DNA from: Ylistrum balloti
Lineage: Eukaryota
NCBI RefSeq assembly: GCF_031769215.1
Contig: NW_026781914.1
Location: 248,001-312,000, forward strand
Length of the DNA: 64,000 nucleotides
Direction of reading: 5' to 3'
Part shown: piece after piece, positions 6,093 to 54,110 of the stretch
How the letters are laid out: each line of letters opens with the position of its first letter
Numbering within the stretch: the stretch's first letter is position 1
Translations under genes and position numbers: made by a program
Notes under the pieces: generated by a model
What the model saw: the letters and a program-made list of their open reading frames with translations, nothing else
Told to the model about the DNA's origin: nothing
The model's database searches: none

Positions 6093-6103
6093 TTTATTTT
6101 ATT
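6093..6103 (-). terminator. Candidate polyadenylation signals (two overlapping AATAAA) of the large gene
   Basis: + strand tttattttatt gives two AATAAA on the - strand, ~140 nt after the stop; AT-rich context lowers specificity. Confidence 0.45.
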
Positions 6104-6238
6104 ACTCCAGTCCACACTGTTAACTGAACAACTATTGCAAAATAAAACCTCTTAAAATAGGATACTGTTTAAACCAAACTTAAGACAATGACTTTTGGTT
6201 AAATTCGATTTCCTATCATTCCATTAAGTCCATTGAGA

Positions 6239-6439
6239 TCACCTTTCAACACACGACTGTCTGCCGTCTCCATGATAACCGGGCATGCATACACAGGTAG
6301 GGACCCCGTCCAACAGACCACACATGCCATGAGTGTGACACTCAATATCTATCTCTGTCCGTCTGAAACGAGCCAGTCCATTGATATGTTTACATGTCAT
6401 CTTCTCACTGCAATCCTCCGTCACAAACGTACCGCCAAT
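6239..6439 (-). CDS. Terminal exon: TILa-like + EGF, stop
   Basis: IGGTFVTEDCSEKMTC...IECHTHGMCGLLDGVPTCVCMPGYHGDGRQSCVER-TGA. Confidence 0.88.
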   Translation of the reverse strand: MGGTFVTEDCSEKMTCKHINGLARFRRTEIDIECHTHGMCGLLDGVPTCVCMPGYHGDGRQSCVER

Positions 6440-9400
6440 CTGTTTAACAAACGTAACAAAAATTGTTTTGTGTTGGTTCCATAATTCATGCATGATGTTT
6501 ATTTCATATATATGCCAATAATAGGTTAGGTACATGCGTCTTCAGAATGTAATAATTTAGATATCTCTTTCTTAAACACGTGCTCTACGACCCCTTCAAC
6601 TCCGGAAAAAATAAACAGGTCCATGAAAAATATGTCTAAGTATGTTCAGCGCATAATATCGAGTCGATCAGTCTTATTCCACCAATGAAAACACTTGGAG
6701 AACACACACAGTCCACACTACGTATGTTTCACTGACCATTTACAACCGAACCTCGTTATCTCGAACTCGTATAACTCGAAGGCACTCTTTGATTGGAAGC
6801 ATTTCGTCAGTCCCTGTCTAACTTTACACAAATTATTAAAACTTACTTCAATCGAAAATTCGGTTATCTCGAAATTTTGGTCACGCCGAGTTCGAGATAA
6901 CGAATTTCGACTGTAATACTTATCTTGATAGCCTATGACTGTAATCGACCGAAAGAAGTCATATTTTGAACATCGATAAGATTGTTATGTTTTCGTATTT
7001 CCTTAAGTAATCGCTGTGAGGTGTTAGTTGTGTTTTCTAAAGCTTTCCGGTGTCTTGATAAAGAGGCTAACTGCTTCGAAAATTTGACATAGAATTGATT
7101 CATCATCGTATTACTACTCTTGTCATTATCGGTATAAATATATATGTATGCATCAATAGATAACCATCTGATACATATATTGCATCCGTGCAAAATGATT
7201 GCTTATGTGACACACTCCTTTATATTAAGCGATATGAATTATTCAAAGACTGTAAACAGACTCACAGGTACATAGGTTTCGATTGGACAAACACAACCAC
7301 ACATCTCAGGTTTGACGCATTTGTCTCCATCCAGGACGTACCCGGGCTGACACTCGCACCCATCAGAGGTCGGAAGATCACAGGTCTGATTAGGATGCAT
7401 GCACGTTGCGGGACATCCACTGACTGTGTCCGAGTACCTCATATTTTCCTTGCACTTAATAGCTATAGAAACACAATATACATCACCAGTACTGTTAGCC
7501 AATGAGATCCTTTGATAAGCTGAAGATTACAGAAAAAATTCGATTACACTGCCAAAGATTAACTTAAATTTCAAGTTAGATCTTCAGTTATTGTTTGGTC
7601 TATAGTTCATCAATATCTTAACCCAGATTGATAGCCGATATAGGAAAAGAAATTACAGACGCTTTAAACAATTTAATGCGTAAAAAAGAATCGGATTTTT
7701 TTTTTTACTTACAACAAAATGTTGATGTTCTGTATCGTATGGTAAACCCTCTCTGGCTACATTCCAGGGCGAATTCCGCCATATAGGCTCTGATGATCTG
7801 TTCCAACTTGATTTGAAATTCAAAGTATCTACAAACATCTCGAACACACGCTTGGTATACACGTCGCGCTAAGTATGGGTAAAAATCCATGCACTTCCGG
7901 AACGGGCTTTCTACCCTAGATAAATCCAGCAGTCCACACATATCTGGTTTGGAAGCTGTTAATTTTCTCTCCTCACTACACAAAATTGTTGGAACCGAGA
8001 TCAAGCATTTTCTGAAAAGAAAAAAAAATCCATCCTTAAAACATAAACATGGGTAAGACATGGATTTACACAAGATAAACATAAACAAGAGTGAGACACA
8101 GGATTTACACAAGATAAACATAAACAAGAGTGAGACACTGGATTTACCCAAGATATACATAAACATATGTGAGACACATAGTCTTAACTGAAATGGAAAC
8201 GAGTTTCATATAAAACAAAACAAGTTCCATACCTTTGATTATTTTCAGGTCGAATTGCCTCTTGAACTATGTAGCTACCGGCTATAAGCATGTCTCTCTT
8301 TTCCGCTGGGTGGTCTGCCACGTTCTTGCCGTCTGCAGTAGTGAAGTCATCTTGCCCCACACCGTTACAGTTGCCACATAAACCCTTAAGTTCTCCGTGG
8401 TATCGTGACGGCACCCGCACCACAACGGCACCGTGTCCATCCCACCAAACAACAAGGCCACACTTTGTCCATACTACCAGCCACTGACCTGACATGTATA
8501 TCCTAACATTCCCGTCAGCCACGAAATTCGGCGTATAACGAAGATAGCCATTCACCTTAAACGATTGTTCAATATATGTTAGATTAACGTTTTTTGGCTT
8601 GCATATAACGTCTAAAATAAGACGTGTAAAAGATATCAAATATGCAGGTTGTAGCTCCACAGCAATTTAACCGTTATGCATAGAAATTATTTTCAGGTGA
8701 AGCACTACGCTAATTGAATAAAATGTCAACCACATTCATGTTGTTTAAACAGAGACTAATGATGTTGTCCTCTGCAAGACCAGGGTCCCTATGAATAGGA
8801 CGTCTATTGACATCACTAACTTACATAAAACTTGTAATCACTTCCCAAACTGAGCTTGGTGTCATAGATCTGTATATCAACCGATTTCACCCACGTAGAC
8901 GAATTCAATCCCTCGTGACTGTTGTTTATTTTCACAGTGAATGCGCATGCGTCGGATGCTATGGTTGACTTAGTGAGAATATATCGGCATGCATTAGTAA
9001 CATCGATGCTCTCTCCGTCGTGCGTTCGCACGTGAGGGTCCCCAGATGCAGTACATACACATCTTCCTGACAAATACATCACAAGAAGATTGACGTAATC
9101 GTCCTGTAACTTGGAGGTGTCAGAGAAAGGATAAGAGAATATATCACCTTTCTATCCCATCATTTAGAAACTGTAATGCATTGTATTTGGCGCAACAAAT
9201 TTAATCGTATAATGACAATTTTATAAATTAATGTAATGAGAACATATCCATAACACTTGCTATATCAAGAAGTCAGAAATAGTAACTAGCGCAATCCTAT
9301 TAAGCGCATTATTTTTAGTTCGAAGAGCGCTGAGATTGTCGATGAAACATGTAAGTTAACAGCATAAAGATTTCAACCGCATTCAACAAATATAAACCAA

Positions 9401-12400
9401 GCGATGCTTATATCTCCAATACCAAAAGATTACGGTACAAACAGAGATTCCTTTGCCAGTGGATATACTATAGACCTTCCATGTAGAACATCATTGTCAG
9501 TGTTTATTGTTTGTAAGCAATATTAAGTAAGATTTACTTTTACATTCCACTTCACCGTCACCATAGTAACCACCCTTACAAACACACCGTCCGTCATCAC
9601 AGACAGCATTTTCAGCACATTTCCTTCCTCTACAGTATCCTTTAGCTTTAAATCAAGATGTATGAAAACGTCATAATCACAACACAAAATATTATATAAT
9701 GCCAACAAAATGAATATGTTTAATATTAATAAGATATTTATTTTAACCAACAAGTCTTATTCAACAACATTCTTTGTAACAGATCTTAATTCAGTTAAGC
9801 ATAATTCCAAGCGTTTCATCTACTTATGTTGATTTGTTACATACGATCACAGAAGTTGTAGCCGTCCCCATAGTAACCGTGTCTACAACCACACCGGAAG
9901 TTCTCACACGTTCCGTAATCCGCACACTTCCGACCTCCACACAAACCAAGGGCTGCAAACAAACCAAGAAAAAAAATGAAAAACAGCTTATATCAGAGAC
10001 AGAATGCACCGAGACAAACTAAAGAAACCATTTCTATTTGCATTTTTATCTTGTACACAACGTTGCCTACCTGACCTTTTTAACATCTTGACGTGGAAGG
10101 AATTTAGTTTTAAAAACGGAAATAATTTTATAACCATTTTCAGAATACACCTTCTGCATAATCATTTCTGACTGTAAGAAAGTAACTTTGAAATGCAGTT
10201 TTCATATAGAGAGAAACACTATACGTACGTTCACACTTTAAGTATCCATTGCCATGGTAACCTTGGTGACAGGTACAAGTTCCATTGGCACAATCAGCAT
10301 TTTCCACACATAAACGTCCGTTACAGAAGGCTGAAGTTCAAAAGATTTACGCACATGTATTTCAATATACATATACAAATGTCATTCGGAATGTTACATA
10401 TTTCCTGGCATCATCAATAGCATCACATGAATAGGAAAACGTATGATAATTTTGCATACGTCACAACTTTCACCTCTTATTTATGCTATATGCGTATATT
10501 AGCATATTGAACAATAGATACTTTCAGAATACTCACGATTACATTTTTTATATCCATTTCCAAAGTATCCCCTTTCACACAAACACATGTAGTTATTGCA
10601 GTAGGCATTGGGGGCACATGGTAGGCCGTTACAAATGCCTTCAGCTGCAAATCGATATATACATGGTTACCTAAATTCTTCAAGAAAAAAATATAAACTT
10701 GTACGTTTCACTCCGAAATCACTGTGTTGTGATTCATCACTTGAATTCCTATTTTAGAAATACCGACAAGTCAACATAATCTGAATTCCAACTCAAATTC
10801 GATGAAACTAAGGCAATGTATGAACAAAAGATTTATACGGAGATTCCTAAAAAAATTAAAAGGAGAATAGGACCAAATATCCGGAAAGAGTTAGCGTTTT
10901 CTGCTTCATCGACGTCACACGCCGTGTAAACCTAGGGCAATCCAAGTAAGAAATGCCACGTTCTGGAAAAAAAACCAAGGTAAAAATAACGGAACACACC
11001 AGCAAACTAACGAGCATAACACGTCTAATTATATATTAAACAAGGAAATACATTTGTTTGTGGCGTGAAAATGGACCATGCTTTCATCTCTTTATACATT
11101 TCTATAATGCTATGTACTCAAATTATACTGTCCTGTACAATAATTCTAAATGATGCTCAGTGAATTCACTACAAAATCCTCAACTGTTTGGTATTTATTT
11201 TTTTTGAAAGCTTACGTTCACATTTGAAAAATCCATTTCCATGGTAGCCCTCTTCGCAGAAACATGTGTCTTGTCTGCACTCTGCATGGTCTACACATTT
11301 GCGTCCGCCACAAAGTTCTGATGATTGAAACAAGAATTAAATTTAGCTATCAACGTAATTTTCTGGTAATGTTTTATTGAAATTATTTTTTCTAAAATGT
11401 AATTAACTAATTCAACAACTGAAGTCACGATTGACTGCTTTATCAAGGCTACTGAATCTCCTTACAATATACTGTAGTATATCGCGAACCGTTACTGAAA
11501 GTTAGTAATATAAAGATTGCTACTTAATGAAGACAGGAACAATATAAAGACTGATACTAAATGAAAACAGATCCGATTGAATTAACAGTGGCGGTTGATA
11601 TCTACTGTCACACATAGTAACTTCCTTCAACTATATTTACCTTCACAGCTAGTTACTTCCTTCATCAATATGTTGTATATCTACCGTCACACTTAGTTAC
11701 ATTCTGTTCTATATCTACAGTCACACTTAGTTACCTTCTGTTCTATATCTACAGTCACACTTAGTTACATTCTGTTCTATATCTACCGTCACACTTAGTT
11801 ACATTCTGTTCTATATCTACAGTCACACTTAGTTACATTCTGTTCTATATCTACAGTCACACTTAGTTACATTCTGTTCTATATCTACCGTCACACTTAG
11901 TTACATTCTGTTCTATATCTACCGTCACACTTAGTTACATTCTGTTCTATATCTACCGTCACACCTAGGTTACATTCTGTTCTATATCTACCGTCACACT
12001 TAGTTACATTCTGTTCTATATCTACAGTCACACTTAGTTACATTCTGTTCTATATCTACCGTCACACTTAGTTACATTCTGTTCTATATCTACCGTCACA
12101 CTTTGTTACATTCTGTTCTATATCTACCGTCACACTTAGTTACCTTCTGTTCTATATATACAGTCACACTTAGTTACCTTCTGTTCTATATCTACCGTCA
12201 CACTTAGTTACATTCTGTTCTATATCTACCGTCACACTTAGTTACATTCTGTTCTATATCTACCGTCACACTTAGTTACATTCTGTTCTATATCTACCGT
12301 CACACTTAGTTACCTTCTGTTCTATATCTACAGTCACACTTAGTTACACTCTGTTCTATATCTACCGTCACACTTAGTTACCTTCTGTTCTATATCTACA

Positions 12401-15400
12401 GTCACACTTAGTTACACTCTGTTCTATGTCTACCGTCACACTTAGTTACATTCTGTTCTATATATACCTTCACACTTAGTTACTTTCTGTTCTATATCTA
12501 CAGTCACACTTAGTTACCTTCTGTTCTATATCTACCGTCACACTTAGTTACATTCTGTTCTATATCTACCGTCACACTTAGTTACCTTCTGTTCTATATC
12601 TACAGTCACACTTAGTTACACTCTGTTCTATATCTACCGTCACACTTAGTTACCTTCTGTTCTATATCTACAGTCACACTTAGTTACACTCTGTTCTATG
12701 TCTACCGTCACACTTAGTTACATTCTGTTCTATATATACCTTCACACTTAGTTACATTCTGTTCTATATCTACAGTCACACTTAGTTACCTTCTGTTCTA
12801 TATATACAGTCACACTTAGTTACATTCTGTTCTATATCTACAGTCTGTTCTATATCTACCGTCACACTTAGTTACATTCTGTTCTATATCTACCGTCACA
12901 CTTAGTTACATTCTGTTCTATATCTACCGTCACACTTAGTTACATTCTGTTCTATATCTACCGTCACACTTAGTTACATTCTGTTCTATATCTACAGTCA
13001 CACTTAGTTACATTGTGTTCTATATCTACCGTCACACTTAGTTACATTCTGTTATATATCTACAGTCACACTTAGTTACATTCTGTTCTATATCTACCAT
13101 CACACTTAGTTACATTCTGTTCTATATCTACCGTCACTCTAACTTACGTGCCTCGCACCTTTATCTCTACCTTTACATTTAGTTACCCTCGGCTCTCCTC
13201 TGCTCTTTACCTACCTTCGCACTTCGTGGTCCCATCTCCGATATATCCTTGTTTACAACGACACACATAGTTAGAACATTCGGCATTGGCAGCACACTGT
13301 TTCCCGCCGCAATACTCCACAGCTGTTATGGTGACGTCAAAAATTAAAATAAAATATAAAAGAAGACAACTGGCAAACGTAATATATATATTTGAATCAG
13401 AATTGCCACTATTGAAAAAAAAACTCTCTTTTGAAAATGAAATCAAAATAAAAAAAAAACACAGTATAAACAATTATACTAGATAATAATGATTCAGGAA
13501 GACATTAATGTGTTTATAGAGTCATTATTAGATAATTACTATATAAATAATCTCTGGTTAAATTATGATTGTAATATCCAGTGTGTTTACTCTAGGATCC
13601 TGTCATGTCGAAGTTTCTTTACTTCAATATTTACATAATTTTATCACTTTATTCACATTCCTTATTTCATCGTTTTAAAGAAACTTATCTACACGATTTG
13701 TCTGACAACGTACATTCACATTTCTGGTAACCATTTCCATGGTAACCTTCCTTACACATGCAACTCCCTTGGGAACAGTATGCAAACGAAGTGCATTTTC
13801 TGCCTTTGCAAAGAGCTGAAATATAAGTAAAAGACTATTTTCTTTACTTTTGTCGTAATTCAATCACATACATTCATCATGAACTAGCACATCGTCTGAA
13901 CACTTTTATCTAAGAAAATAAACAGATCTCTATATACATCTCCTTTCAAGGCGTCCATAAAATTATTGCATAATCAAAATAACACTTTGTACATACGTTC
14001 ACAGAAAGTTCGGCCGTTTCCGACGAACCCTTCCTTACAAACGCACTGGAAGTTGGTGCATTCTGAATTTGCCACACATCTCTGACCCCCGCATATACCA
14101 TTAACTGAAAACAGAAATATGTCGAAGTTGCTTTACGCTTTTAATTGAAATCCGTTTTTTCTTTATACAGATATTTTTAACGTCTTTAACATTCGATCTT
14201 ATTTCTCTTCTTCATATTATGCTAGATTTATTATTGTTGTAAGTCATGTAAGATCTATAAACAAATACGTTAACACACCTTCACAACGGATATATCCATC
14301 ACCATGGTATCCGGAAATGCACGTGCATTTGCCGTCGTGACATTCAGCGTTGTCAGTACATATCTGTCCACCACATATTTCTGTACAAGTGAAGATGGAT
14401 TATAATTTCGCTTTATATGAAAAAGGCTCATACTTGTATTCGTATGGTACCTATAGAATTAAAGGTTTTATCATTCTTATAGCAGGTGATGTTAGTTTGT
14501 CTTATCATCACCATGATAACGACGCATTAAAACGGTATTAAGTTCAGACATTGAAAAAATATATTTTTTACTTAATTTGAATAGATGTGAAAATGTAAAG
14601 GAGTATGCTAAATGTGTGTAAATGAAACCTTACCGTCACACTCATCGTACCCGTCACCCCGATAACCCGTCATACAAACGCACTGGAAGTTAACACAATG
14701 CGCAAATGCCGCGCACGTTTTTCCGTCACAAAATCCGTCCACTACAATAATAAAAATTCATTTTAAAGATAAAGTTTGCTTGGTGCTTATATGCATATTG
14801 TTCTTGTTCTTTAAGAAGATTTTGAAGTGATATAAATATTTCGATACAGTTGAACTTTTATCGGGAATGATATTCTATAATACCTTCACATCTAGTATTG
14901 CCGTCTCCGTGATAGCCCTTGTCACACACACATTTGTCGTCGATGCAGGATGCAAACTCCACACACTTGATTGTCCCACAAAGGGCTAAAACAATAGAAC
15001 ATATTACCTGATTTACAAATTGCTATCACAAAACAATACTATTTCTGGTATGCGAAAAGTAAAGCGATTTGAAAATGTGTTGTTGTTATCAAGCCATAAA
15101 AATCGGATAATTACCTTTACATTTCTTGATACCGTCCCCAACATATCCTTGTTGACACTGACATTGGAAGTTCACACACTCCGCGTTCACAGAACATTCC
15201 TTACCACCACACACAGTAGTCGCTAAAATATATATCATACCATACTAAAAATATGTGATATGTTTAGGTGCGTATTTCAACAAACATATAAGTATCTTGC
15301 TAAATCTGTTTACTCGTCAGCAAAGAAAACGTATGTGGTCCTCAAAACAACTCTAACTGTGCGTTAAAACAACAAAGCGTGTGTTTGCTTAGATAGCAAA

Positions 15401-42400: not shown

Positions 42401-45400
42401 CTGATGACGTCTTGTCTTAAAATAAGAAAAATTAATTGACCACGTTCATCATATATATCCACCAGATTTCAACTTTCATAGTGTAAATTTTCCATTTCTG
42501 GATAGCAATATTAATGCATCTCCAACCTATGATATTTACATGTCACAGTTGATTGATATCAAAGGGCCTGTTCCCATTATCACGATTTTCGTGCAAGTCA
42601 TCATCTGACTGATAGGGCGGGTTGCGCAGTGGTAACGCAGTTGCCTTTCACCTAGACGTTCGAAATTCGATTCCTTGAACGGACGTAAAAGGGTATGCGG
42701 TCACCAACACGATCATGGTGACCCAATCATGTTGGGTTTTCCACGGCTACTCCAGTTTCCTCCAATAATGAAAACTCTCTCTTTCCCAAACGACCAGGTA
42801 CACCAGGGACTGGCAACCAAGTGTTTTACATGTTTACAAATGACTGTCGAGAGAATCGAATTTTATTCTCGGCCGAGAGTGATGGATTTGATGGTGTCTT
42901 CTTGTGTTAAGGTAATGGCGTTCATTCTTAAGATTGAATTCTGTTTTGCATTAATGGGAAGTGATTCTATAGGGTAGAAGAAGAAGGAAGGAAGGAATCT
43001 TTGTTAAGATTGGTGTATCAGACAAAGTAGTAAGCTTGTCTAGTATTGTGGAATGTCACTCACCAACAGGAAGCTTGCTAGATAAGTGAGAAGGACAATG
43101 ACCTTGAATAACCGTGTTAATTATACTTTCTGTAGGATTTCTCGTGGTATTGTAAGGATCAGAAGTTGTGTAGACTTCACACATTCGATAGGGGTAATTG
43201 CATCAGTGAAAAATAAATGTCATACATTCTGTCATCATTAAAGCAAGTTTAGCAATTAAATATTATTAATTGTGTAACTTAAAACATACACTATGAGTGT
43301 TAAGTATGACTGGGACAACTGTCACAATTAGGTGAGCTCCGTCGCGCTCTTCTGTATAAAAATTAAAAATGAATTATGAAAGAAAAGCCCGAGAAAAAAG
43401 TCCGTCGCAAACCATATCCAAGTACTCACAAGTACTTCTTTGTCCTTTATGAGGTCAATAACGAACCCGTTAACCATCACGTGCACAGATCGCGTGTAGG
43501 CCACGTTCTTCCTGGTACCCCTCTGCTCGTTTTTGAGCTCGATATTAAAGGCACATTTGTCGCTCTCGTTTCCGTATTTTGTTAGGGTGTATCGACAAGG
43601 ACCGTTTACAGTTATCTTTTGTTTGTCGTATAACCGCAAGTGGGGGTCCCCGTAGGCAGCGCACGTGCACACATCTGAAATAAAAAAGTAAACTAAAAAT
43701 TAAGACAAGTTAATCAGCGATAATTTATAATTAGTTCAGCGTTGACACAAAAACAAGCCTCAGGTGTATTATAATTTTATTCAATATTATCAACGAGTGA
43801 GACCAATACATATATCGAATCTGAGAATTCGTGTTGCTTAATTTCGCTCGTATCTACGCAAGCAACATTATGTATTTCTGTCGTCGATAAAAACAGATAA
43901 AAATGCTAATCACAAACAATAGGAGTGTTTCAAAATGTATCAGATGCTAATCTGGTATTCAACTTTTTCGGGAAACGTTTGAAAAAAATAATGCTTAATG
44001 AGAATTTTCCCTATTGTAAACGTTGTAAAATATCAACAAGAAAATACAGATATGTTTACAAAAGTCAGAAACGCAGAATCGACGAAAAGATGGTAAATTA
44101 TTAACAAAAATATATATTAACGTAGACACTATAGGAAAAGAAGAATGACCCTGTGTTCCTGAAGGGTAAGCGTGATGCATAATACTAGATCTATGGCGGC
44201 TGGTACCCTGATACCAGCGCCCTAACACTCCTTTGTATGGTGAGCAGTAAATGAGACACATGCACACGGGACATAACGTGTGTGAGGATTAATTATGTAA
44301 GTGACATTGTTCTAAGACAGAAGCGGGTTTTAATGGAAATGAGGCTTGTTTCAATGCAAAATGTTTACTAAGTATCGTTAGGCAAAGGGACAACTATACA
44401 CCTTACCTTCACACTTGACGTACGGGTTACCATAGAAACCCTTGCTGCAGTGACACTTTCCCTCAACACATACAGCATTTACCCCACACCCTTTGTCACA
44501 GTTGAGTCCTACAGGAAGTATAAAAAGGAACGTCATCGAAGATTATCTACATAAGCAATGGTAATATTTCTACATATCTAAGAAATCGGGGAAATTCACT
44601 TATCGAAAAAGTTGTAATTCCTAACATTGAATACTTCTGATGTGAAACTGCGAGAACAATCACTTCCGGTAGACAGATGTGTTATTTCTGTTTTCCTTTA
44701 TACATTATCAAACGTTTTTCATGTTCAATAATCTAATAAATTTGAATATATCAAATGTAACGCGATGAAGTGTATTTACCGAATAAATACAAGAAGGACG
44801 TGTGCTATCATAAGGGGTAGCGTGGGATGGGACGTGTGCTATCATAAGGAGTAGCGTGGGATGGGACGTGTGCTATCATAAGGAGTAGCGTGGGATGGGA
44901 CGTGTGCTATCATAAGGAGTGGCGTGGGATGGGACGTGTGCTATCATAAGGAGTAGCGTGGGATGGGACGTGTGCTATCATAAGGGGTAGCGTGGGATAG
45001 GACGTGTGCTATCATAAGGGGTAGCGTGGGATGGGACGTGTGCTATCATAAGGGGTAGCGTGGGATGGGACGTGTGCTATCATAAGGAGTAGCGTGGGAT
45101 GGGACATGTGCTATCATATGGGGTAGCGTGGGATAGGACGTGTGCTATCATAAAGGGTAGCGTAGGATGGTGAGGGAGCACGAAGCAACATTTTTTATAT
45201 TAAGTTTTAACAATTGATTTGACATTTGATCTTGTCACTAGGTTTTTTGGGTTATTTATTTTTCCCGAAGGTCTATCGCCGATTCAGATAGCAATGTATG
45301 TTAACTGTAGAGGACGTTTCAAATTAAGGTCTGGATGAAAGCGTTTCTAAAGAGGTAGAGAATGTATCGAGTGTAATGTTTTCAGCGGAACCTTATGCTT

Positions 45401-51400: not shown

Positions 51401-52497
51401 TAATCTGCGAATTGGTATAGCCAACGGCGCCAGAAATCGCAACAGAATCCCTTCAATAGAAGACACAACTGTCAAGATCTAATCAAACAAGCAATATCAC
51501 TTAATAAACAAGCTATATTACAGTACAATACCAAGAAATAAGCAGGACAAAGTGTCTGTTTACACGTCTACCAATATTTATTAGCCGAATTAATCACCCT
51601 GACTCCCGGTAATGGATGGTAGCTACCTAACTGAACGGGGACTATCACATACCGTCCAGAGAAATCGGGGTAAAGTTTCTTGACCAATAACACAATGATA
51701 ATAGCACAGGACGGTCCGTTTCTCAGATTCCTGGGAAAACAGCTCCGAGAGTGTACGTCGATTCTTCCATCTCAACCTAACCCTATCCCTACCCTTACGC
51801 CACATGGCACACTTTCTATTGCAATACACAAACGGTACCAACAAAAACGATACATATCTAATGCAAACCATACAACAGCAAAATATACCATTTTGGTGTG
51901 CAATATGTTTTCGTATATTAAAGGTATTACAATGAAAAAAAACAAGTTGATCAAAACTGGTTAAGTGTCCTGTATTCAGTTGCTATGAAGTAGTTATTTT
52001 GAAGATTTAATTCAATATGAAATGATGTTTTTGTAGACGAGGTCATGTGGAAGCTTTTATTACCAAAATAAAAATTATTTATGTTCTATCTAATCAACCA
52101 TAGCAAGTGTCAATGTATGACATTATGGCGTATTAGTAATTCTGGATAGATTGTGTGGATACCAATTTTCATCTGTTGGTGAATTGGAGAAAATAAACTG
52201 AAGTTGAATTTAAATTTAATTGATTCAGTATCTCTATGACCTGATGAATATATAAGGGAAACCAACCTTCTCCTGTGGTGGCGTAACAGACTTGAAACTG
52301 ACCATCACACCCTTTGTCAACCCAGACAGCACCATGAGACGTTGGACCGTACGTCACATCCTGTTGACATGCACCCTGGGACAGATCCCTCATCAGTGAC
52401 ATCGAGAAGACAGCCACACTTCCGAGTCCAGGCCGGCATTCGTGTCGTTTGGACTCTTTGTCCCCGCAGCGTATAATGGCGCATGTCTGCGTCTCAG
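6239..52497 (-). CDS. Large secreted Cys-rich protein, FCGBP/zonadhesin/Sfp1-like: DUF3011/ADEL-like lectin, EGF, VWD-C8-TIL-TILa, 37 EGF, VWD-C8-TIL-TILa-EGF; 5'-incomplete
   Basis: 49 exons with canonical AG/GT whose phases chain without a frameshift (6,743 nt with the longer form of exon 9538) to TGA at 6241-6239. No transmembrane segment seen. AATAAA twice ~140 nt after the stop. Signal-peptide exon not located. Linkage of exon 52267-52497 is inferred from phase and strand across a 7.8-kb intron. Confidence 0.9.
6743..6913. mobile_element. Tc1/mariner (pogo/Tigger-type) MITE
   Basis: TIRs CAACCGAACCTCGTTATCTCGAACTC / GAGTTCGAGATAACGAATTTCGACTG, with TA on both flanks (6741-6742, 6914-6915). 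Confidence 0.85.
7266..7462 (-). CDS. Exon: TIL domain 2
   Basis: IKCKENMRYSDTVSGCPATCMHPNQTCDLPTSDGCECQPGYVLDGDKCVKPEMCGCVCP; 197 bp, phase 1/0. Confidence 0.93.
7713..8011 (-). CDS. Exon: C8 domain 2
   Basis: MCGLLDLSRVESPFRKC...YQACVRDVC...FALECSQRGFTIRYRTSTFC; 299 bp, phase 2/1. Confidence 0.92.
8040..8182. repeat. ~39-bp tandem repeat, ~3 copies
   Basis: acaagataaacataaacaagagtgagacacaggatttac. Confidence 0.8.
8233..8555 (-). CDS. Exon: VWD-2 C-half
   Basis: VNGYLRYTPNF...[35 protein letters not shown]...; 323 bp, phase 0/2. Confidence 0.93.
8825..9066 (-). CDS. Exon: VWD-2 N-half with GDPH
   Basis: RCVCTASGDPHVRTHDGESIDVTNACRYILTK...STWVKSVDIQIYDTKLSLGSDYKFY; 242 bp, phase 1/0. Confidence 0.93.
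9538..9645 (-). CDS. EGF array exon 37 (A-like; 108 bp, or 102 bp with the acceptor at 9639)
   Basis: (KG)YCRGRKCAENAVCDDGRCVCKGGYYGDGEVECK; two AAG acceptors 6 nt apart. Confidence 0.85.
9845..9952 (-). CDS. EGF array exon 36 (B)
   Basis: LGLCGGRKCADYGTCENFRCGCRHGYYGDGYNFCD. Confidence 0.9.
10229..10330 (-). CDS. EGF array exon 35 (A)
   Basis: FCNGRLCVENADCANGTCTCHQGYHGNGYLKCE. Confidence 0.9.
10537..10644 (-). CDS. EGF array exon 34 (B)
   Basis: EGICNGLPCAPNAYCNNYMCLCERGYFGNGYKKCN. Confidence 0.9.
10770..10985 (-). mobile_element. Dispersed repeat, probable Penelope-like 3' end (copy 1)
   Basis: Reverse complement of the core GTCGATGAAGCAGAAAACGCT...CTTTCCGGA shared with five other loci. 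Confidence 0.65.
11216..11317 (-). CDS. EGF array exon 33 (A)
   Basis: LCGGRKCVDHAECRQDTCFCEEGYHGNGFFKCE. Confidence 0.9.
11595..13140. repeat. 34-bp minisatellite, >40 copies
   Basis: accgtcacacttagttacattctgttctatatct. Confidence 0.97.
13215..13322 (-). CDS. EGF array exon 32 (B)
   Basis: VEYCGGKQCAANAECSNYVCRCKQGYIGDGTTKCE. Confidence 0.9.
13714..13815 (-). CDS. EGF array exon 31 (A)
   Basis: LCKGRKCTSFAYCSQGSCMCKEGYHGNGYQKCE. Confidence 0.9.
13997..14104 (-). CDS. EGF array exon 30 (B)
   Basis: NGICGGQRCVANSECTNFQCVCKEGFVGNGRTFCE. Confidence 0.9.
14279..14380 (-). CDS. EGF array exon 29 (A)
   Basis: ICGGQICTDNAECHDGKCTCISGYHGDGYIRCE; weak donor GTGTGT. Confidence 0.88.
14634..14741 (-). 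CDS. EGF array exon 28 (B)
   Basis: DGFCDGKTCAAFAHCVNFQCVCMTGYRGDGYDECD. Confidence 0.9.
14884..14985 (-). CDS. EGF array exon 27 (A)
   Basis: LCGTIKCVEFASCIDDKCVCDKGYHGDGNTRCE. Confidence 0.9.
15115..15222 (-). CDS. EGF array exon 26 (B)
   Basis: TTVCGGKECSVNAECVNFQCQCQQGYVGDGIKKCK. Confidence 0.9.
15385..15830. repeat. 30-bp minisatellite, ~15 copies
   Basis: tttagatagcaaagccacacttacagtatg; source of the spurious ORF 15364-15864. Confidence 0.97.
15981..16082 (-). CDS. EGF array exon 25 (A)
   Basis: LCNDRLCVANSICVDNKCQCAEGFHGNGHVLCE. Confidence 0.9.
16386..16493 (-). CDS. EGF array exon 24 (B)
   Basis: NGFCNGDRCAEYAECQNYRCKCRPGYSGDGNTKCT. Confidence 0.9.
16985..17086 (-). CDS. EGF array exon 23 (A)
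   Basis: ICKGIPCVDHAECTESGCKCTQGYHGDGYIKCE. Confidence 0.9.
17413..17520 (-). CDS. EGF array exon 22 (B)
   Basis: SGSCGGKTCTENASCKNYHCLCDPDYYGDGYTRCL; AAG acceptor. Confidence 0.88.
17600..17790. repeat. 50-bp tandem duplication of exon end plus donor, ~4 copies
   Basis: catacataccttcacattgtatgtaggcgtcgccactgtaccctgggtct. Confidence 0.95.
17760..17861 (-). CDS. EGF array exon 21 (A)
   Basis: LCDGRSCVDHSSCIDGKCECDTGYSGDAYIQCE. Confidence 0.9.
18179..18286 (-). CDS. EGF array exon 20 (B)
   Basis: PYLCGRKICTEFAECINYVCKCKKGFHGNGYNKCK. Confidence 0.9.
18655..18756 (-). CDS. EGF array exon 19 (A)
   Basis: LCGGQTCANYAVCKDNKCVCSFGYQGNGLILCE. Confidence 0.9.
19055..19275 (+). mobile_element. Dispersed repeat, probable Penelope-like 3' end (copy 2)
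   Basis: gttggttccgttgttgtata...gacgaagcagaagatacttacctgtccgcaacacttgtcttattc. Confidence 0.65.
19400..20160. repeat. 53/54-bp minisatellite, ~14 copies
   Basis: catacatgtttcagtataaaacttcacatttaatttaattcaaagtctgtttac. Confidence 0.97.
20163..20270 (-). CDS. EGF array exon 18 (B)
   Basis: ASVCDGRTCASFAKCINYECKCNHGYIGDPYNKCE. Confidence 0.9.
20483..20584 (-). CDS. EGF array exon 17 (A)
   Basis: VCDFRRCAEYAYCDANECVCQNGYQGNPYIRCE. Confidence 0.9.
20851..21549. mobile_element. Non-autonomous Helentron/HINE-type element
   Basis: Left end gatcccagagggatc hairpin plus gctcccac; right end gatggtgggctaaaaa (subterminal inverted repeat); internal degenerate repeats of agggaccaaggggaac...gagaaagatc. 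Family call from recalled end structure. Confidence 0.6.
21555..21662 (-). CDS. EGF array exon 16 (B)
   Basis: LGICGGTNCVQNAHCFDYACVCDQGYIGDGYSKCE. Confidence 0.9.
21818..21919 (-). CDS. EGF array exon 15 (A)
   Basis: LCGERICSQHAQCLNDECVCTAGFHGNGYNKCE. Confidence 0.9.
22463..22745. mobile_element. Probable short Helentron/HINE-type element
   Basis: aatgctcccc near the left end, ggacggacgg microsatellite remnant, 3' hairpin atgctcc...ggagcat then A-run. Confidence 0.45.
22771..22878 (-). CDS. EGF array exon 14 (B)
   Basis: VYTCGGKTCVTNAVCINYACQCQTGFIGNGYLECK. Confidence 0.9.
23112..23213 (-). CDS. EGF array exon 13 (A)
   Basis: LCGGERCGGNAECQNGKCVCYDGFHGTPTIRCE; AAG acceptor. Confidence 0.88.
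23270..25010. repeat. 36-38-bp minisatellite
   Basis: tcatacagaaaacatacagatatagtagatgtgtcat; source of spurious ORFs at 23616-25217. Confidence 0.97.
25065..25172 (-). CDS. EGF array exon 12 (B, 7 Cys)
   Basis: LDFCDGRHCCEHATCLYGKCVCSPGYVGDGYVSCK. Confidence 0.88.
25360..25461 (-). CDS. EGF array exon 11 (A)
   Basis: LCSNRRCAKFATCKDGKCRCMEGFHGNGYLQCY; AAG acceptor. Confidence 0.88.
25867..25974 (-). CDS. EGF array exon 10 (B)
   Basis: TSLCGGKMCSPDAKCLNYQCVCRDGFVGDGYSHCE; weak donor GTACTT. Confidence 0.88.
26126..26227 (-). CDS. EGF array exon 9 (A)
   Basis: LCKGRQCVQNAYCYREECVCTEGYHGNGYLKCE. Confidence 0.9.
26681..26788 (-). CDS. EGF array exon 8 (B)
   Basis: LRVCDGRKCGANAVCVNYQCTCTRGFYGDPYMQCT. 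Confidence 0.9.
26995..28505. repeat. 26/32-bp minisatellite
   Basis: gtatctgagaacgtatttatctatat, with or without caatat. Confidence 0.97.
28730..28831 (-). CDS. EGF array exon 7 (A)
   Basis: LCNGRRCAQRASCIDGECRCDDGFHGDGDVKCE. Confidence 0.9.
28955..29125 (-). mobile_element. Dispersed repeat, probable Penelope-like 3' end (copy 3)
   Basis: ggagaataagacaatgtgttcaggaaggtaagcgtcttctgcttcattgacg. Confidence 0.65.
29762..29869 (-). CDS. EGF array exon 6 (B)
   Basis: DGKCDDAICAKGATCVNSICRCGAGYHGDPYVVCK. Confidence 0.9.
30541..30642 (-). CDS. EGF array exon 5 (A, 7 Cys)
   Basis: LCDGMRCCSNASCQDDRCVCLPGFHGNGYIKCE. Confidence 0.9.
31085..31965. repeat. 50-bp minisatellite, ~17 copies
   Basis: ggtaccacatcacatttgttgtagggagcacctaacctttggagtacctt. 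Confidence 0.95.
32418..32525 (-). CDS. EGF array exon 4 (B)
   Basis: AAVCDGRTCVADAECVNYKCVCQRGYYGDGYHACI. Confidence 0.9.
32578..32836. repeat. 57-bp tandem repeat derived from acceptor plus start of exon 32418-32525
   Basis: caggtgcgactttcacacaccgtgacggttacaaaaaa...; ~4.5 copies. Confidence 0.88.
33246..33347 (-). CDS. EGF array exon 3 (A)
   Basis: LCNRRRCADNAQCVDDNCRCIPGYHGNGYIHCE. Confidence 0.9.
33580..33815. repeat. 48-bp degenerate tandem repeat, ~4.5 copies
   Basis: gaccacgtgacgctgacgaagacattatgatgacagaacgggacatat. Confidence 0.85.
33951..34058 (-). CDS. EGF array exon 2 (type B, 108 bp)
   Basis: IGTCGGESCSENADCINYNCVCRQGYVGDGYDECK. Confidence 0.9.
35154..35255 (-). CDS. EGF array exon 1 (type A, 102 bp)
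   Basis: LCNGTKCGLHARCLDMRCRCGNGYHGNPYVNCE. Confidence 0.9.
35386..35578 (-). CDS. Exon: TILa-like + EGF 1
   Basis: LWKSSLSLDCQTMLTC...QCHEYAACGLQSGRPNCACLDGYFGDGITSCE; 193 bp, phase 0/1. Confidence 0.9.
37785..38280. repeat. 26-bp minisatellite abutting the TIL-1 donor, ~19 copies
   Basis: acaggtaaatgtcctatgtcatactt. Confidence 0.97.
38281..38483 (-). CDS. Exon: TIL domain 1
   Basis: KCPENMRYSTEISGCPATCLDPHRAQTTCSQPLSAGCECLPGYLLSGLACVPMTDCGC; 203 bp, phase 1/0. Confidence 0.93.
38690..38988 (-). CDS. Exon: C8 domain 1
   Basis: CGLLFPARQASSPFQEC...SSCRFDVC...VVCQAMDSMAAECEERGYMVKWRTESFC; 299 bp, phase 2/1. Confidence 0.93.
39760..41543. repeat. Local segmental duplications (B'-exon-A-B-A')
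   Basis: 39760-40098 matches 41006-41342; 40812-41008 matches 41340-41543. Confidence 0.92.
40247..40566 (-). CDS. Exon: VWD-1 C-half
   Basis: INGVAQFFPV...[35 protein letters not shown]...; 320 bp, phase 0/2. Confidence 0.93.
41560..42610 (+). mobile_element. Decayed Penelope-like retroelement RT fragment
   Basis: + strand frames give TFDFSMLYTTIPH, FQQTIGIPMGTNCAPPLADLF, FNFTFRYTDDVLS, VNFPFLDSNI, broken by frameshifts and deletions. Confidence 0.85.
42612..42830 (+). mobile_element. tRNA-derived SINE
   Basis: A-box-like gggttgcgcagtggtaacgc, B-box-like ttcgattcc, central block gggttttccacggctactccagtttcctcc. Confidence 0.7.
43430..43674 (-). CDS. Exon: VWD-1 N-half with GDPH
   Basis: VCTCAAYGDPHLRLYDKQKITVNGPCRYTLTK...NVAYTRSVHVMVNGFVIDLIKDKEVL; 245 bp, phase 1/0. 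Confidence 0.93.
44407..44508 (-). CDS. Exon: EGF-like module
   Basis: LNCDKGCGVNAVCVEGKCHCSKGFYGNPYVKCE; 102 bp, phase 1/1. Confidence 0.9.
44796..45172. repeat. 34-bp G-rich minisatellite, ~11 copies
   Basis: gggacgtgtgctatcataaggagtagcgtgggat. Confidence 0.97.
46745..46950 (-). mobile_element. Dispersed repeat, probable Penelope-like 3' end (copy 4)
   Basis: gaataagccaggtgttccggaagtgtaaacatcttctgcttcatcgacg. Confidence 0.65.
48081..48639. mobile_element. hAT-like MITE with 5-bp TSD
   Basis: TIRs CAGGGCTAGAAAAA / TTTTTCTAACCCTG (1 mismatch); TTATC on both flanks; five subterminal TCACTYRCCCG-type motifs. Confidence 0.8.
48847..49086. mobile_element. Probable Helentron/HINE-type element remnant
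   Basis: ggtcacc near the left end and caggtgaccg...cccatgggcctcttgt at the right end; ttgtccattgtcgtccgt block. Confidence 0.5.
52267..52497 (-). CDS. Exon: DUF3011/ADEL-lectin-like domain
   Basis: ETQTCAIIRCGDKESKRHECRPGLGSVAVFSMSLMRDLSQGACQQDVTYGPTSHGAVWVDKGCDGQFQVCYATTGE; 231 bp, phase 1/1; L-x-R-x-x-S..C..TYG..VWVDKGC..F signature. Confidence 0.75.
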
Positions 52498-53614
52498 CTG
52501 AAAGTAAAGCGCACGCTGTGAAAATAAAATAACACTTTCAAGACCCCCCCCCCCTCCCCCTCCACCCACAAAACCTGTGTTATTTCTTACTGTATGTGTT
52601 TTTGGGAGTGAAGTTATCAGTTTATTAAAAACAAACAAATCGTACTTGCATTCTTATCGATTTAGCATTTCAGATTTTCGTAAATTAAAAAAAAAAGTAT
52701 TTTGGATCCACGTAGGAAGATATCTACTTTTTCATGTTTGGTTTTAGATGAAAAGAATTAGAGCAGAAATGATGCAAGTTTTCTTTTACTTCAGTAAAGA
52801 AATCCTCTTAAAGATATCTTAAAATAAGCAAATAATGATAATAATAATAAAAAACAAAAATGTGTTAGTTCCATTTCGAAAAAAATGTCTATTGTTAAGA
52901 CTATCAATTCGGTGTCCTCTGGACTACTCCGAAAATGACAATCATATCTGTTGGCAAGTCGTGTTCACACAAAACTTTAAAGTCTATATTAGCAGACTTT
53001 AATTGTTTTTCGTCAGAAAGATGGAAGTATTTGGCTCTGGTGAAAATCATCGAGGTCACAACCTGATAAAAGCGCTGACGTTAGTTGCTTTACATAGAGA
53101 GATTATGGCCAATCACTTCATTTTTATCGGCGCACAGCAGAATGAAACAGATCAAATTGCTTTTAATAATCAGCCAGATCTAATAAAACATACATAACAT
53201 CCCTCCCATTACTAATGATGGGGCTTATCTGTTTGTTGTCAATAAACCGTATAACACCAAGGCTCACCAGAGATTTTACCAGCTGTCAACACAGTGTCTT
53301 TATCACGGATAAATTGATCCAATAACTAGAAATGTCAGTTCGATGTTTCACGTTTTTTCTTGAATACGGATCATAAGAAATCTAGAATTCTAGAAAAGCT
53401 TTTAAGATATTCGGCAAATTACATGACTCCAAAGTTATGCAAAGTCAGTTTTAATCGATCGTGTAACAAGCGATTTTCAGAATGGTCTTTCCTAGTCTTC
53501 TCACTTTATGGAGGCGAGACTACATCAGTAACACAATCTGTGTATGTCAGTAAGACAATCAGCAGCATAGGTAAGAAAAACACAGTCTACATTGCTTAAC
53601 CCATCTCGGCCTAC

Positions 53615-54110
53615 ACTGGTAAAACAATTGGTACGACAATTTCGGCATACGTAGTAAAACAATTTCAGCTTAGAGTGGTAAGATTGTCTCAGCCTCCATT
53701 GGTAAAACAATTATAGCTTATAGTGGTAAGATTCTCTCAGTCTCCATTGGTAAAACAATTATAGCTTATAGTGGTAAGATTCTCTCAGTCTCCATTGGTC
53801 AAACAATTATAGATTATAGTGGTAAGACTCTCTCAGTCTCCATTGTTCAAACAATTATAACTTATAGTGGTAAGACTCTCTCAGCCTCCATTGGTAAAAC
53901 AATTATAGCTTATAGTGGTAGACTCTCTCAGCCTCCGTTGGTAAAACAATTATAGCTTATAGTGGTAAGACTCTCTCAGCCTCCATTGGTAAAACAATTT
54001 CAGCTTATAGTGGTAAGATTCTCTCAGCCTCCGTTGGTAAAACAATTATAGCTTATAGTGGAAAGACTGTCTCAGTCTCCATTGGTAAAACAATTTCAGT
54101 CAAAATTTAT
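53615..54110. repeat. 48-bp minisatellite, ~10 copies
   Basis: ggtaaaacaattatagcttatagtggtaagactctctcagcctccatt. Confidence 0.95.

What the first reader, a model, noticed from the sequence alone, without database searches (positions are those of the whole stretch)
6239..52497. Giant dumbbell-shaped secreted protein: lectin head and two VWD-C8-TIL cassettes joined by a 37-module EGF rod
Seen: 49 frame-compatible exons giving lectin-like domain, EGF, VWD/C8/TIL/TILa-EGF, 37 EGF, VWD/C8/TIL/TILa-EGF, with no TM segment before the stop. Established: VWD-C8-TIL assemblies drive multimerisation in VWF, gel-forming mucins, FCGBP and zonadhesin; the sea-star adhesive protein Sfp1 combines VWD, C8, TIL, EGF and lectin domains; mussel foot protein mfp-2 is a tandem EGF protein. 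Inference: here an EGF rod replaces the O-glycosylated PTS spacer of mucins, with a polymerising module at each end and a glycan-binding tip. That makes it a candidate structural scaffold for byssus, cement, mucus or egg coat. I do not recognise this exact architecture.
Basis: partly seen in the sequence, partly recalled or inferred. Interest (0 to 1): 0.82.

Follow-up and report, generated by a model that had tools for sequence, protein, structure and literature searches.

The report
Lectin-tipped VWD–EGF-rod bivalve matrix gene
The window holds one large, intact gene for an extracellular protein with a sugar-binding-type head, two mucus-protein-type assembly modules and a rod of exactly 37 EGF modules between them; pearl oyster has the same design with the same 37 modules, so it is a conserved but undescribed bivalve protein whose tissue and role are unknown.

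Summary
On the minus strand, 49 exons with canonical GT-AG sites and compatible phases join into a stop-free 2,232-residue reading frame. The order is a DUF3011 head, one EGF, VWD-C8-TIL-EGF, 37 single-exon EGF_3 modules (strictly alternating 102/108 nt, all phase 1), and a second VWD-C8-TIL-EGF. The stop is at 6241-6239. No transmembrane segment is present. No signal-peptide exon lies in the window, so the 5' end is incomplete.

The design is not unique to this genome. The Pinctada imbricata locus of KAK3100182.1 holds every exon in the same order, including the head-to-EGF junction and exactly 37 rod EGFs. A Pinctada paralogue also has 37, but no head was found nearby. A scallop "Tenascin-X" model is the C-terminal third. 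The three arrays align in register (0 of 20,000 permutations reach the observed score), so the rod length is ancestral and has been held constant.

Oyster "FCGBP-like/zonadhesin-like" proteins are looser relatives. No paper describing this architecture was found. Function is inferred only: no RNA data were available.

I read it as a secreted, disulfide-polymerising, lectin-tipped spacer protein, a new variant of the VWD-C8-TIL mosaic kind. This scan earlier noted another DUF3011-VWD mosaic on a different piece of the same genome (s1-234341).

The parts
52267..52497 (-). Exon 1 of the model: a single DUF3011 repeat (the 'lectin head'), phase 1 in and phase 1 out, 231 nt
   Evidence: Pfam PF11218 at 4.3e-9. 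Acceptor ctttactttcag| and donor GAAG|gttggt. The four family Cys and the WVDxGC motif are present. AF2 model has pLDDT 89.7 and is all-beta. 33-35% identical to the Pinctada head exon.
44407..44508 (-). Exon 2: single EGF, 102 nt, phase 1-1
   Evidence: Weak Pfam EGF hits. Splice sites. 56% identical to the Pinctada exon at L001:19551-19646, which lies about 320 nt after that species' head exon.
43430..43674 (-). Exon 3: N-terminal half of VWD-1, with a GDPH motif
   Evidence: Pfam VWD profile positions 1-80, E 2.9e-11. GDPH at model residue 119.
40247..40566 (-). Exon 4: C-terminal half of VWD-1
   Evidence: Pfam VWD profile positions 90-156, E 1.6e-13. Best solved relative is FCGBP 8rde at 8.7e-37.
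38690..38988 (-). Exon 5: C8-1
   Evidence: Pfam C8, E 7.5e-13. 56% identical to the Pinctada exon.
38281..38483 (-). Exon 6: TIL-1
   Evidence: Pfam TIL, E 3.4e-10. Splice sites.
35386..35578 (-). Exon 7: Cys-rich linker plus an EGF_3 module that closes cassette 1
   Evidence: Pfam EGF_3, E 1.8e-6, with no TILa hit. Aligns with the last exon of cassette 2.
9538..35255 (-). Rod: 37 single-exon EGF_3 modules (exons 8-44), strictly alternating 102 and 108 nt, all phase 1-1. Exons as low-high coordinates: 35154-35255, 33951-34058, 33246-33347, 32418-32525, 30541-30642, 29762-29869, 28730-28831, 26681-26788, 26126-26227, 25867-25974, 25360-25461, 25065-25172, 23112-23213, 22771-22878, 21818-21919, 21555-21662, 20483-20584, 20163-20270, 18655-18756, 18179-18286, 17760-17861, 17413-17520, 16985-17086, 16386-16493, 15981-16082, 15115-15222, 14884-14985, 14634-14741, 14279-14380, 13997-14104, 13714-13815, 13215-13322, 11216-11317, 10537-10644, 10229-10330, 9845-9952, 9538-9639
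   Evidence: Built. Of the 38 EGF exons scanned, 23 hit EGF_3 and only 1 hits EGF_CA. No further EGF-like exon lies in the introns. The array is in register with both Pinctada arrays.
8825..9066 (-). Exon 45: N-terminal half of VWD-2, with a GDPH motif
   Evidence: Pfam VWD, E 2.5e-10. GDPH at model residue 1833.
8233..8555 (-). Exon 46: C-terminal half of VWD-2
   Evidence: Pfam VWD, E 2e-14. The acceptor tttaag| was chosen by parallel with cassette 1.
7713..7975 (-). Exon 47: C8-2
   Evidence: Pfam C8, E 3.7e-7.
7266..7462 (-). Exon 48: TIL-2
   Evidence: Not scanned against Pfam. TIL-type Cys pattern. 48% identical to the Pinctada TIL-2 exon, E 5e-20. Splice sites.
6239..6439 (-). Exon 49: Cys-rich linker plus EGF, ending ...SCVER and the stop TGA at 6241-6239
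   Evidence: The C-termini of the scallop and Pinctada-paralogue proteins end 3-5 residues after the same Cys.
6098..6103 (-). AATAAA, about 136 nt after the stop: a candidate polyadenylation signal
   Evidence: Pattern search. No transcript evidence.

Best explanation
This is one intact gene of a probable pteriomorph bivalve. It encodes a large (at least 244 kDa) extracellular mosaic protein.

From N to C the protein has one DUF3011 lectin-type domain, one EGF, and an FCGBP-type D-assembly (VWD-C8-TIL plus EGF_3). A rod of 37 non-calcium-binding EGF_3 modules follows, then a second D-assembly, and the protein ends there.

Most likely mechanism (inferred). The protein is secreted. Both VWD domains self-cleave at GDPH but stay disulfide-held, as in FCGBP. 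The D-assemblies at the two ends make homotypic, disulfide-stabilised contacts that link molecules into chains or networks. The disulfide-stiffened rod, held at 37 modules, sets a fixed spacing of roughly 100 nm. The DUF3011 head ties one end to acidic or galactose-type glycans. The result would be a lectin-tipped structural cross-linker of an extracellular material such as byssus, mucus, egg envelope or a clot.

Shown: the gene structure, the domain identities, the orthology, the conserved count of 37 in register, and the depletion of variants in exons. Inferred: secretion, cleavage, polymerisation, sugar binding, and the tissue.
For: Gene model: 49 GT-AG exons with one stop at the end of the joined CDS.

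Domains: Pfam calls on single exons.

Orthology: the model aligns to Pinctada KAK3100182.1 (P0179) from residue 4 to 953 at 49% identity, crossing the head-EGF-cassette junctions. That protein's genomic locus L001 holds every exon in the same order, with 37 rod EGFs. The paralogue locus L002 also holds 37.

Register: mean score at shift 0 is 115/111/113, against 95-107 at other even shifts. None of 20,000 parity-preserving permutations reaches the observed trace.

VWD relatives: the closest solved structures are FCGBP, VWF and MUC2. GDPH is present in both VWDs and in nearly all relatives. FCGBP is secreted GDPH-cleaved but disulfide-held, and it forms C-terminal disulfide dimers (PMC8267560, PMC10880436, PMC11796319).

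Head: the DUF3011 proteins AKL/ADEL bind galacturonic acid (PMC5484111). The best hits of the head are gastropod 'D-galacturonic acid binding lectin' and 'capsulin'.

Compartment: there is no TM segment, and relatives end just after the last EGF. A textbook signal exon lies upstream of the Pinctada head exon.

Constraint: in four other DNA data sets, 6 of 40 listed substitutions are exonic against a 36% exon share (p 0.003). All indels are intronic.
Against: No transcript evidence of any kind exists for this locus, so splicing, expression and tissue are unverified.

The first exon with ATG and signal peptide is not in the window.

Polymerisation, GDPH cleavage and sugar binding are inferred from family membership only. 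GDPH in VWD-2 is not kept in the Pinctada orthologue, which has GNSH.

The head is a single repeat, whereas AKL has three, so its avidity may be low.

The AF2 model of the head finds no clear solved relative: best Foldseek E is 0.11 and best Z is 5.4.

The variant-depletion test used only the 40 listed of 67 substitutions.
Confidence: 0.6

Rival explanations
1. Specifically a byssus or foot-gland structural protein: a cohesive fibre component like mussel mfp-2 or scallop Sbp9/TNL.
For: [quoted passage not shown] The scallop relative P0178 is annotated 'Tenascin-X'. VWD, EGF and lectin domains recur in marine adhesives (papers listed). The rod is 6.6% Tyr.
Against: No expression data are available. 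The EGF numbers of the scallop byssal EC family vary from 1 to 49, while this rod is fixed at 37 in register across an orthologue and a paralogue. That fixed count looks more like a conserved matrix protein. The Sbp9 hallmark PCGGPC and the Calx-beta domains are absent. I could not show that P0178 is the published TNL gene.
Confidence: 0.25
2. A mucus or humoral defence and clotting protein: a lectin-armed, FCGBP- or hemocytin-like cross-linker that traps microbes or seals wounds.
For: The closest solved VWD is FCGBP. Oyster relatives with SUEL lectin, WSC and five cassettes are named FCGBP-like or zonadhesin-like. From my own knowledge, galacturonic acid and other uronic acids occur in microbial and algal polysaccharides.
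Against: There are no expression or proteomic data. FCGBP has contiguous D-assemblies and no rod. Nothing in the sequence is immune-specific.
Confidence: 0.25
3. An egg-envelope or gamete-recognition protein: zonadhesin-like, with an egg-lectin-type head.
For: AKL and ADEL are egg lectins (PMC5484111). Relatives are auto-named zonadhesin-like.
Against: The MAM domains, mucin region and TM segment of zonadhesin are absent. Gamete-recognition proteins usually evolve fast in repeat number, whereas this array is fixed.
Confidence: 0.1
4. The exons belong to two or more separate genes (for example a small lectin gene plus a VWD/EGF gene), or the protein continues to an unseen TM exon.
For: A 7.7-kb intron separates the head from the next exon. 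No RNA evidence exists. The last codons ...GAA AG|GTGA could in principle serve as a donor. The Pinctada model reads 46 residues past the last EGF.
Against: Head and EGF exons are adjacent (about 320 nt apart) and joined in the Pinctada model and locus. Phases match. Three of four family members stop 3-5 residues after the last Cys. AATAAA lies about 136 nt after the stop.
Confidence: 0.05

Closest known systems
Pinctada imbricata KAK3100182.1 (P0179, 'hypothetical protein FSP39_015875') and its locus L001
   Same: Same exon order from the DUF3011 head to the last EGF. About 49% identity. 37 rod EGFs in the genome, in register. Same phase-1 102/108-nt exon pattern.
   Different: The deposited model skips about 24 rod exons and has a doubtful N-terminus. 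Pfam does not call its head DUF3011. Its VWD-2 has GNSH instead of GDPH. Its introns are far shorter.
Pinctada paralogue KAK3099984.1 (P0175, locus L002) and Mizuhopecten yessoensis 'Tenascin-X' OWF54868.1 (P0178)
   Same: Cassette, 37 EGFs, cassette in the paralogue's locus. The scallop model is 50% identical over the last 14 EGFs and cassette 2.
   Different: No DUF3011 head was found within 9.9 kb upstream of the paralogue. The scallop model is a C-terminal fragment and its locus could not be fetched.
Oyster 'IgGFc-binding protein-like' and 'zonadhesin-like' proteins (Ostrea edulis P0275, Crassostrea virginica P0277, Saccostrea P0293)
   Same: An N-terminal lectin followed by the same cassette unit VWD(GDPH)-C8-TIL-EGF_3. 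Cassettes are 37-43% identical.
   Different: The lectin is SUEL-type plus WSC, not DUF3011. There are four or five contiguous cassettes and no EGF rod.
Human FCGBP (PDB 8rde, 8r0t), VWF and MUC2 D-assemblies
   Same: The closest solved VWD relatives. VWD-C8-TIL order. GDPH motif.
   Different: FCGBP has 13 contiguous D-assemblies. VWF and mucins have PTS, VWC and CTCK regions. None has a long EGF rod or a DUF3011 domain.
Aplysia egg lectins AKL/ADEL and the gastropod DUF3011 proteins (Plakobranchus GFN97594.1, Elysia 'capsulin')
   Same: The same domain family, with about 34% identity per repeat, the four conserved Cys and the WVDxGC motif.
   Different: Those are made of 3 to 21 DUF3011 repeats alone. 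Here a single repeat caps a VWD/EGF scaffold.
Scallop byssal Sbp9/EC and TNL proteins, mussel mfp-2, sea-star Sfp1
   Same: Long tandem EGF arrays used as cohesive elements (Sbp9, mfp-2). A VWD, EGF and lectin mix in an adhesive (Sfp1).
   Different: No Calx-beta domains and no PCGGPC motif (PMC6244088). Nothing here shows DOPA chemistry. Sfp1's lectins are of other types.

Membership tests
VWD-C8-TIL (D-assembly) mosaic proteins of the FCGBP/zonadhesin/VWF/mucin kind | VWD, C8 and TIL domains in that order | tested here: met
   Pfam hits above the curated cut-offs for VWD and C8 in both cassettes and for TIL-1. TIL-2 is called from its Cys pattern and its match to the Pinctada TIL-2 exon. Best solved relative is FCGBP at 8.7e-37.
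VWD-C8-TIL (D-assembly) mosaic proteins of the FCGBP/zonadhesin/VWF/mucin kind | GDPH autocleavage motif in VWD | tested here: met
   The motif is present at model residues 119 and 1833. Cleavage itself is not testable here.
FCGBP proper | Many contiguous D-assemblies (13 in human) with no other spacer | tested here: not met
   There are only two cassettes, separated by 37 EGFs.
Zonadhesin proper | MAM domains, mucin region, C-terminal TM segment | tested here: not met
   No such Pfam hits on the exons scanned. The highest 19-residue hydropathy is 1.32.
Gel-forming mucins / VWF | PTS region, VWC and CTCK domains | tested here: not met
   The model has no Pro/Thr/Ser-rich stretch (composition). 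It ends 3 residues after the last EGF Cys.
DUF3011 (PF11218) lectin family of AKL/ADEL | Match to PF11218 above the gathering score, with the four conserved Cys and the WVDxGC motif | tested here: met
   37 bits against a cut-off of 25. Alignment A5.
DUF3011 (PF11218) lectin family of AKL/ADEL | Binding of galacturonic acid or galactose | not testable with these tools
   Known only for AKL/ADEL (PMC5484111). There is no solved structure in the PDB from which to map a site.
DUF3011 (PF11218) lectin family of AKL/ADEL | Tandem repeats (three in AKL) | tested here: not met
   Only one copy is in the window.
Scallop EC/Sbp9 byssal family | Calx-beta domains inserted in the EGF array, and a PCGGPC motif at Cys1-Cys2 | tested here: not met
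   The rod EGFs have C-x4-C (for example CGGQTC), and no non-EGF exon lies in the rod. Family features are from PMC6244088.
Calcium-binding EGF arrays (fibrillin/Notch type) | EGF_CA consensus | tested here: not met
   Only 1 of 38 EGF exons hits EGF_CA, while 23 hit EGF_3.

The most novel reading that the evidence does not exclude
The gene defines an undescribed, conserved class of bivalve extracellular fibre-former. It would be a molecular ruler of exactly 37 EGF modules with a self-cleaving, polymerising D-assembly at each end and a uronic-acid-type lectin at the tip. Its fixed length would set the lattice spacing of a material such as byssal thread, periostracum or egg capsule.
Probability: 0.2. 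Interest if true: 0.75.

Novelty: new variant of a known kind. Interest (0 to 1): 0.5.

Why it matters
If the reading holds, bivalves have a conserved building block that joins three well-understood modules in a new way: an FCGBP-type assembly and cleavage domain, a stiff EGF rod of fixed length, and a lectin.

That would give biomaterials and matrix biologists a defined, testable scaffold for how non-mucin, non-collagen extracellular networks are spaced and anchored to glycans.

It also shows that public gene models of this family are badly truncated. The Pinctada model lacks about two thirds of its rod, and the scallop model is misnamed Tenascin-X. The family is therefore invisible to domain-based surveys of adhesive, mucus or shell proteomes.

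The strictly conserved number of 37 EGFs, in register, in an orthologue and a paralogue contrasts with the highly variable EGF counts of scallop byssal EC proteins. This argues for a length-dependent function.

Tried and rejected
Splicing and tissue could not be tested.
- Word-index search with the head alone found nothing in the allowed length range.
- The exhaustive representative search with the head returned only multi-repeat DUF3011 proteins of gastropods and bacteria. It returned none with VWD, because the top 150 are dominated by multi-repeat scores.
- An alignment of the cassette exons with a long DUF3011 protein as first row (A1) retrieved only that protein's relatives.
The EGF-profile alignment A4 then worked.
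- Signal-peptide exon: scans of 52498-64000 with strict and relaxed thresholds, and with the Pinctada candidate peptide, gave nothing convincing.
- PDB by sequence for the head, as a single sequence and as a profile, gave no relative.
- Foldseek and VIA-align on a confident AF2 model gave only weak beta-sandwich matches: E at least 0.11 and Z at most 5.4. No fold assignment is claimed.
- PDB by sequence for the C8 exon gave no hit.
- The scallop locus could not be fetched.
- Rejected: calcium-binding EGF rod.
- Rejected: extra hidden EGF exons.
- Rejected: recent or collapsed repeat artefact. The repeats are only about 47% identical to each other, and four other DNA data sets hold the 6100-10700 part (cassette 2 and the last four rod EGFs) at about 99%.

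Full report
**What is in the sequence**

The window has no N runs and about 35% G+C. A six-Cys EGF/TIL pattern occurs 39 times in minus-strand frames and never on the plus strand. Allowing a doubled second Cys adds two more. This gives 37 EGF units between 35255 and 9538.

Each unit sits in its own exon with an AG acceptor and a GT donor, and all are in phase 1. After choosing the better acceptor at three ambiguous sites, the exon sizes alternate strictly 102, 108, 102 ... 102 nt. That is 19 short 'B' units and 18 long 'A' units. The consensus of A is .g.CgG..C..nA.C.Ny.C.C..GY.GDGY..C. and of B is LC.gr.C..nA.C.dg.CvC..GyHGnGyikCE.

Two five-exon cassettes flank this array. Pfam calls VWD (split over two exons) and C8 in both cassettes, TIL in cassette 1, and EGF_3 in exon 7, with E-values from 1.8e-6 to 2e-14. 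The cassette-2 TIL exon and the last exon were not scanned. They are called from their Cys patterns and their matches to the Pinctada exons. The two cassettes have the same exon boundaries and phases.

Upstream lie one more EGF exon (44508-44407) and a 231-nt exon (52497-52267). The latter matches DUF3011 (PF11218) at 37 bits against a cut-off of 25.

Joined, the 49 exons give 6,701 nt with a single stop at the end (TGA at 6241-6239). The product has 2,232 residues, about 244 kDa, 13.4% Cys (298 Cys) and pI 5.9. No 19-residue window exceeds a hydropathy of 1.32. An AATAAA lies about 136 nt after the stop. No further EGF-like exon hides in the introns. The only extra hit is a partial copy of exon 28 inside a minisatellite.

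Two details differ:
- Exon 7 is not recognised as TILa by Pfam.
- The model begins in phase 1 without an ATG. I could not find a credible signal-peptide exon in the 11.5 kb upstream, which is mostly satellite DNA.

**Is it one real gene?**

No RNA run holds the locus, so I used comparative and population evidence.

*Finding relatives.* A profile of the EGF exons plus the two cassette-closing exons (alignment A4) retrieved bivalve proteins as best hits:
- Pinctada imbricata KAK3100182.1 (P0179, 1,497 aa) and KAK3099984.1 (P0175, 1,556 aa).
- Mizuhopecten yessoensis 'Tenascin-X' OWF54868.1 (P0178, 909 aa).

*The Pinctada orthologue.* Local BLASTP of my spliced model against P0179 aligns residues 4-953 at 49% identity. 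The alignment starts inside the DUF3011 head and crosses the head-EGF-VWD junctions. Residues 1355-2229 align at 43% to P0179's C-terminal cassette.

The genomic locus of P0179 (L001) contains every exon of my model in the same order. It has a head exon, an EGF exon only about 320 nt further on, cassette 1, cassette 2 and the last exon. Between the cassettes it has exactly 37 EGF exons with the same A/B alternation and mostly the same 102/108-nt sizes. The deposited Pinctada model simply skips about 24 of them.

*The Pinctada paralogue and the scallop model.* The paralogue locus (L002) also has exactly 37 EGFs between two cassettes. No head was detected within 9.9 kb upstream. P0178 matches the last 14 EGFs and cassette 2 at 50%.

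*Register test.* Mean BLOSUM62 scores of EGF i against EGF i+k peak at k = 0 in all three comparisons: 115.4, 111.2 and 113.3, against 95-107 at other even shifts. None of 20,000 parity-preserving permutations reaches the observed trace. In addition, 9-12 of the 37 units have their best match on the diagonal. Within the window the units are only about 47% identical to each other.

The 37-unit array is therefore old and position-specific. It is not a recent expansion or an assembly artefact, and its length has been kept in an orthologue and a paralogue.

*Population evidence.* Contigs of four other DNA data sets cover 6100-10700 at about 99%. Of the 40 listed substitutions, 6 fall in exons (3 synonymous, 3 non-synonymous), although exons make up 36% of the stretch (binomial p 0.003). 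All indels and a 52-bp deletion are intronic. A caveat is that 27 further substitutions were not listed.

**What the parts are**

*Head.* The exhaustive search finds 628 DUF3011 relatives. The best are the gastropod 'D-galacturonic acid binding lectin' of Plakobranchus and 'capsulin' of Elysia, at about 34% per repeat, followed by bacterial DUF3011 proteins.

In the alignment, the head has the four family Cys and the WVDxGC.G.F motif. It also has an extra Cys pair, shared with the Pinctada head and some other members.

AKL, the Aplysia kurodai egg lectin, is built of three such repeats and binds galacturonic acid. It is the first DUF3011 member with a known activity (PMC5484111). No DUF3011 structure is in the PDB.

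A confident AF2 model (pLDDT 89.7) is a small all-beta sandwich. It has only weak, non-specific structural matches. 'Lectin' therefore rests on family membership, not on a mapped binding site.

*Cassettes.* The VWD exon's closest solved relatives are FCGBP (8.7e-37), then VWF and MUC2. Both VWDs carry GDPH. In FCGBP this motif is autocatalytically cut at Asp-Pro while disulfides hold the fragments together, and the cut stabilises the domain (PMC8267560, PMC10880436). FCGBP also dimerises through C-terminal disulfides (PMC11796319). In the Pinctada orthologue, VWD-2 has GNSH instead, so cleavage at that site is not universally kept.

*Rod.* Of the 38 EGF exons scanned (the 37 rod exons plus exon 2), 23 hit EGF_3 and only one hits EGF_CA. 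This is a non-calcium-binding, stabilin/nidogen-type EGF. Linkers between the last Cys of one unit and the first Cys of the next are 3 or 5 residues. Twelve units fit the O-fucose consensus C2-x4-S/T-C3. That consensus is from my own knowledge.

**Mechanism**

Shown are the architecture, its conservation, the fixed rod length and the sequence constraint. The rest is inferred from the families:
- The protein enters the secretory pathway. All its domains are extracellular, disulfide-rich types, and a textbook signal exon (MQHRLHWIFWVLALAVANA, donor CAG|gtaaat, phase 1) lies upstream of the Pinctada head exon.
- The VWDs self-cleave at GDPH.
- The two D-assemblies mediate homotypic, disulfide-stabilised end contacts.
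- The rod acts as a spacer of fixed length, roughly 37 x 2.5-3 nm. This is my estimate from known EGF arrays.
- The DUF3011 head binds an acidic or galactose-type glycan.

I give the gene-and-architecture part about 0.9 and the mechanism about 0.5.

Which material the protein builds is open. [quoted passage not shown] VWD, EGF and lectin mixes also recur in temporary adhesives (papers listed). However, those byssal EGF counts vary from 1 to 49 and carry PCGGPC and Calx-beta features that are absent here. The fixed count of 37 fits a conserved matrix, mucus or envelope role equally well.

**Comparison and novelty**

The closest relatives are unnamed or misnamed database models in Pinctada and scallop.

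Next come the oyster 'FCGBP-like/zonadhesin-like' proteins. These have a SUEL lectin and WSC domains followed by four or five contiguous copies of the same cassette unit VWD(GDPH)-C8-TIL-EGF_3, with cassettes 37-43% identical. A Mytilus 'zonadhesin-like' protein mixes the cassette and EGF arrays with FAMeT and kringle domains.

The gene is therefore a member of the VWD-C8-TIL mosaic kind. It fails the defining features of FCGBP, zonadhesin, mucins/VWF, true tenascins and the Sbp9 family. The features I did not find described in the papers searched are the two cassettes flanking a fixed 37-EGF rod and the DUF3011 cap.

If that is right, DUF3011-VWD fusion is recurrent in this animal.

I class the finding as a new variant of a known kind, of moderate interest.

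**Organism**

Identities of about 50% to both Pinctada and Mizuhopecten, and lower identity to oysters and mussels, suggest a pteriomorph bivalve not close to either. The tools keep the name coded, and I did not pursue it.

Noticed in passing
window 17598-17790; 37784-38259; 19412-20160: Three intronic minisatellites are built from an exon end plus its donor. The first repeats the last 33 nt of EGF exon 28 with GTATGT as 50-nt units; reading into it meets TGA. The second repeats TACCT|GTAAGT of the TIL-1 donor as 26-nt units, about 18 copies. The third starts 3 nt after exon 25.
   Followed up: partly
window 8039-8178, 11671-13137, 15389-15827, 23466-25009, 26997-28504, 31124-31963, 32574-32835, 33582-33808, 44796-45170: Twelve of the 48 introns carry minisatellites with periods of 26-57 bp, some longer than 1.4 kb. 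They account for much of the size difference from the compact Pinctada locus.
   Followed up: no
window 53654-54148, 57220-58062, 58888-60534, 62420-64000: The 11 kb upstream of the head exon is largely satellite DNA with periods of 48, 42/84, 32 and 40 bp. No gene or signal-peptide exon was recognised there.
   Followed up: partly
L001:10001-45246 (Pinctada imbricata VSWD01000006.1): GenBank model KAK3100182.1 omits about 24 of the 37 rod EGF exons present in its own locus. It also starts with a doubtful 87-aa exon. A better signal-peptide exon candidate lies at L001:12222-12279.
   Followed up: partly
P0176, P0177, P0240 and about 80 Schistosoma models: Flatworm proteins of about 2,200-2,800 aa with NIDO and Ig domains carry EGF_3 rods 29-36% identical to this rod over more than 1,000 residues. 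Long rods of this EGF type are therefore not confined to molluscs.
   Followed up: no
window 6716-6890: This short stretch in the last intron has about 1,000x summed contig depth in all four DNA data sets and many loose ends. It is a high-copy dispersed repeat.
   Followed up: no
window 30542-30640 and 25066-25170 (EGF exons 12 and 19): Two rod EGFs have a doubled second Cys (CDGMRCC..., CDGRHCC...). This adds two cysteines beyond the six per module, which may be free or paired across modules or molecules.
   Followed up: no
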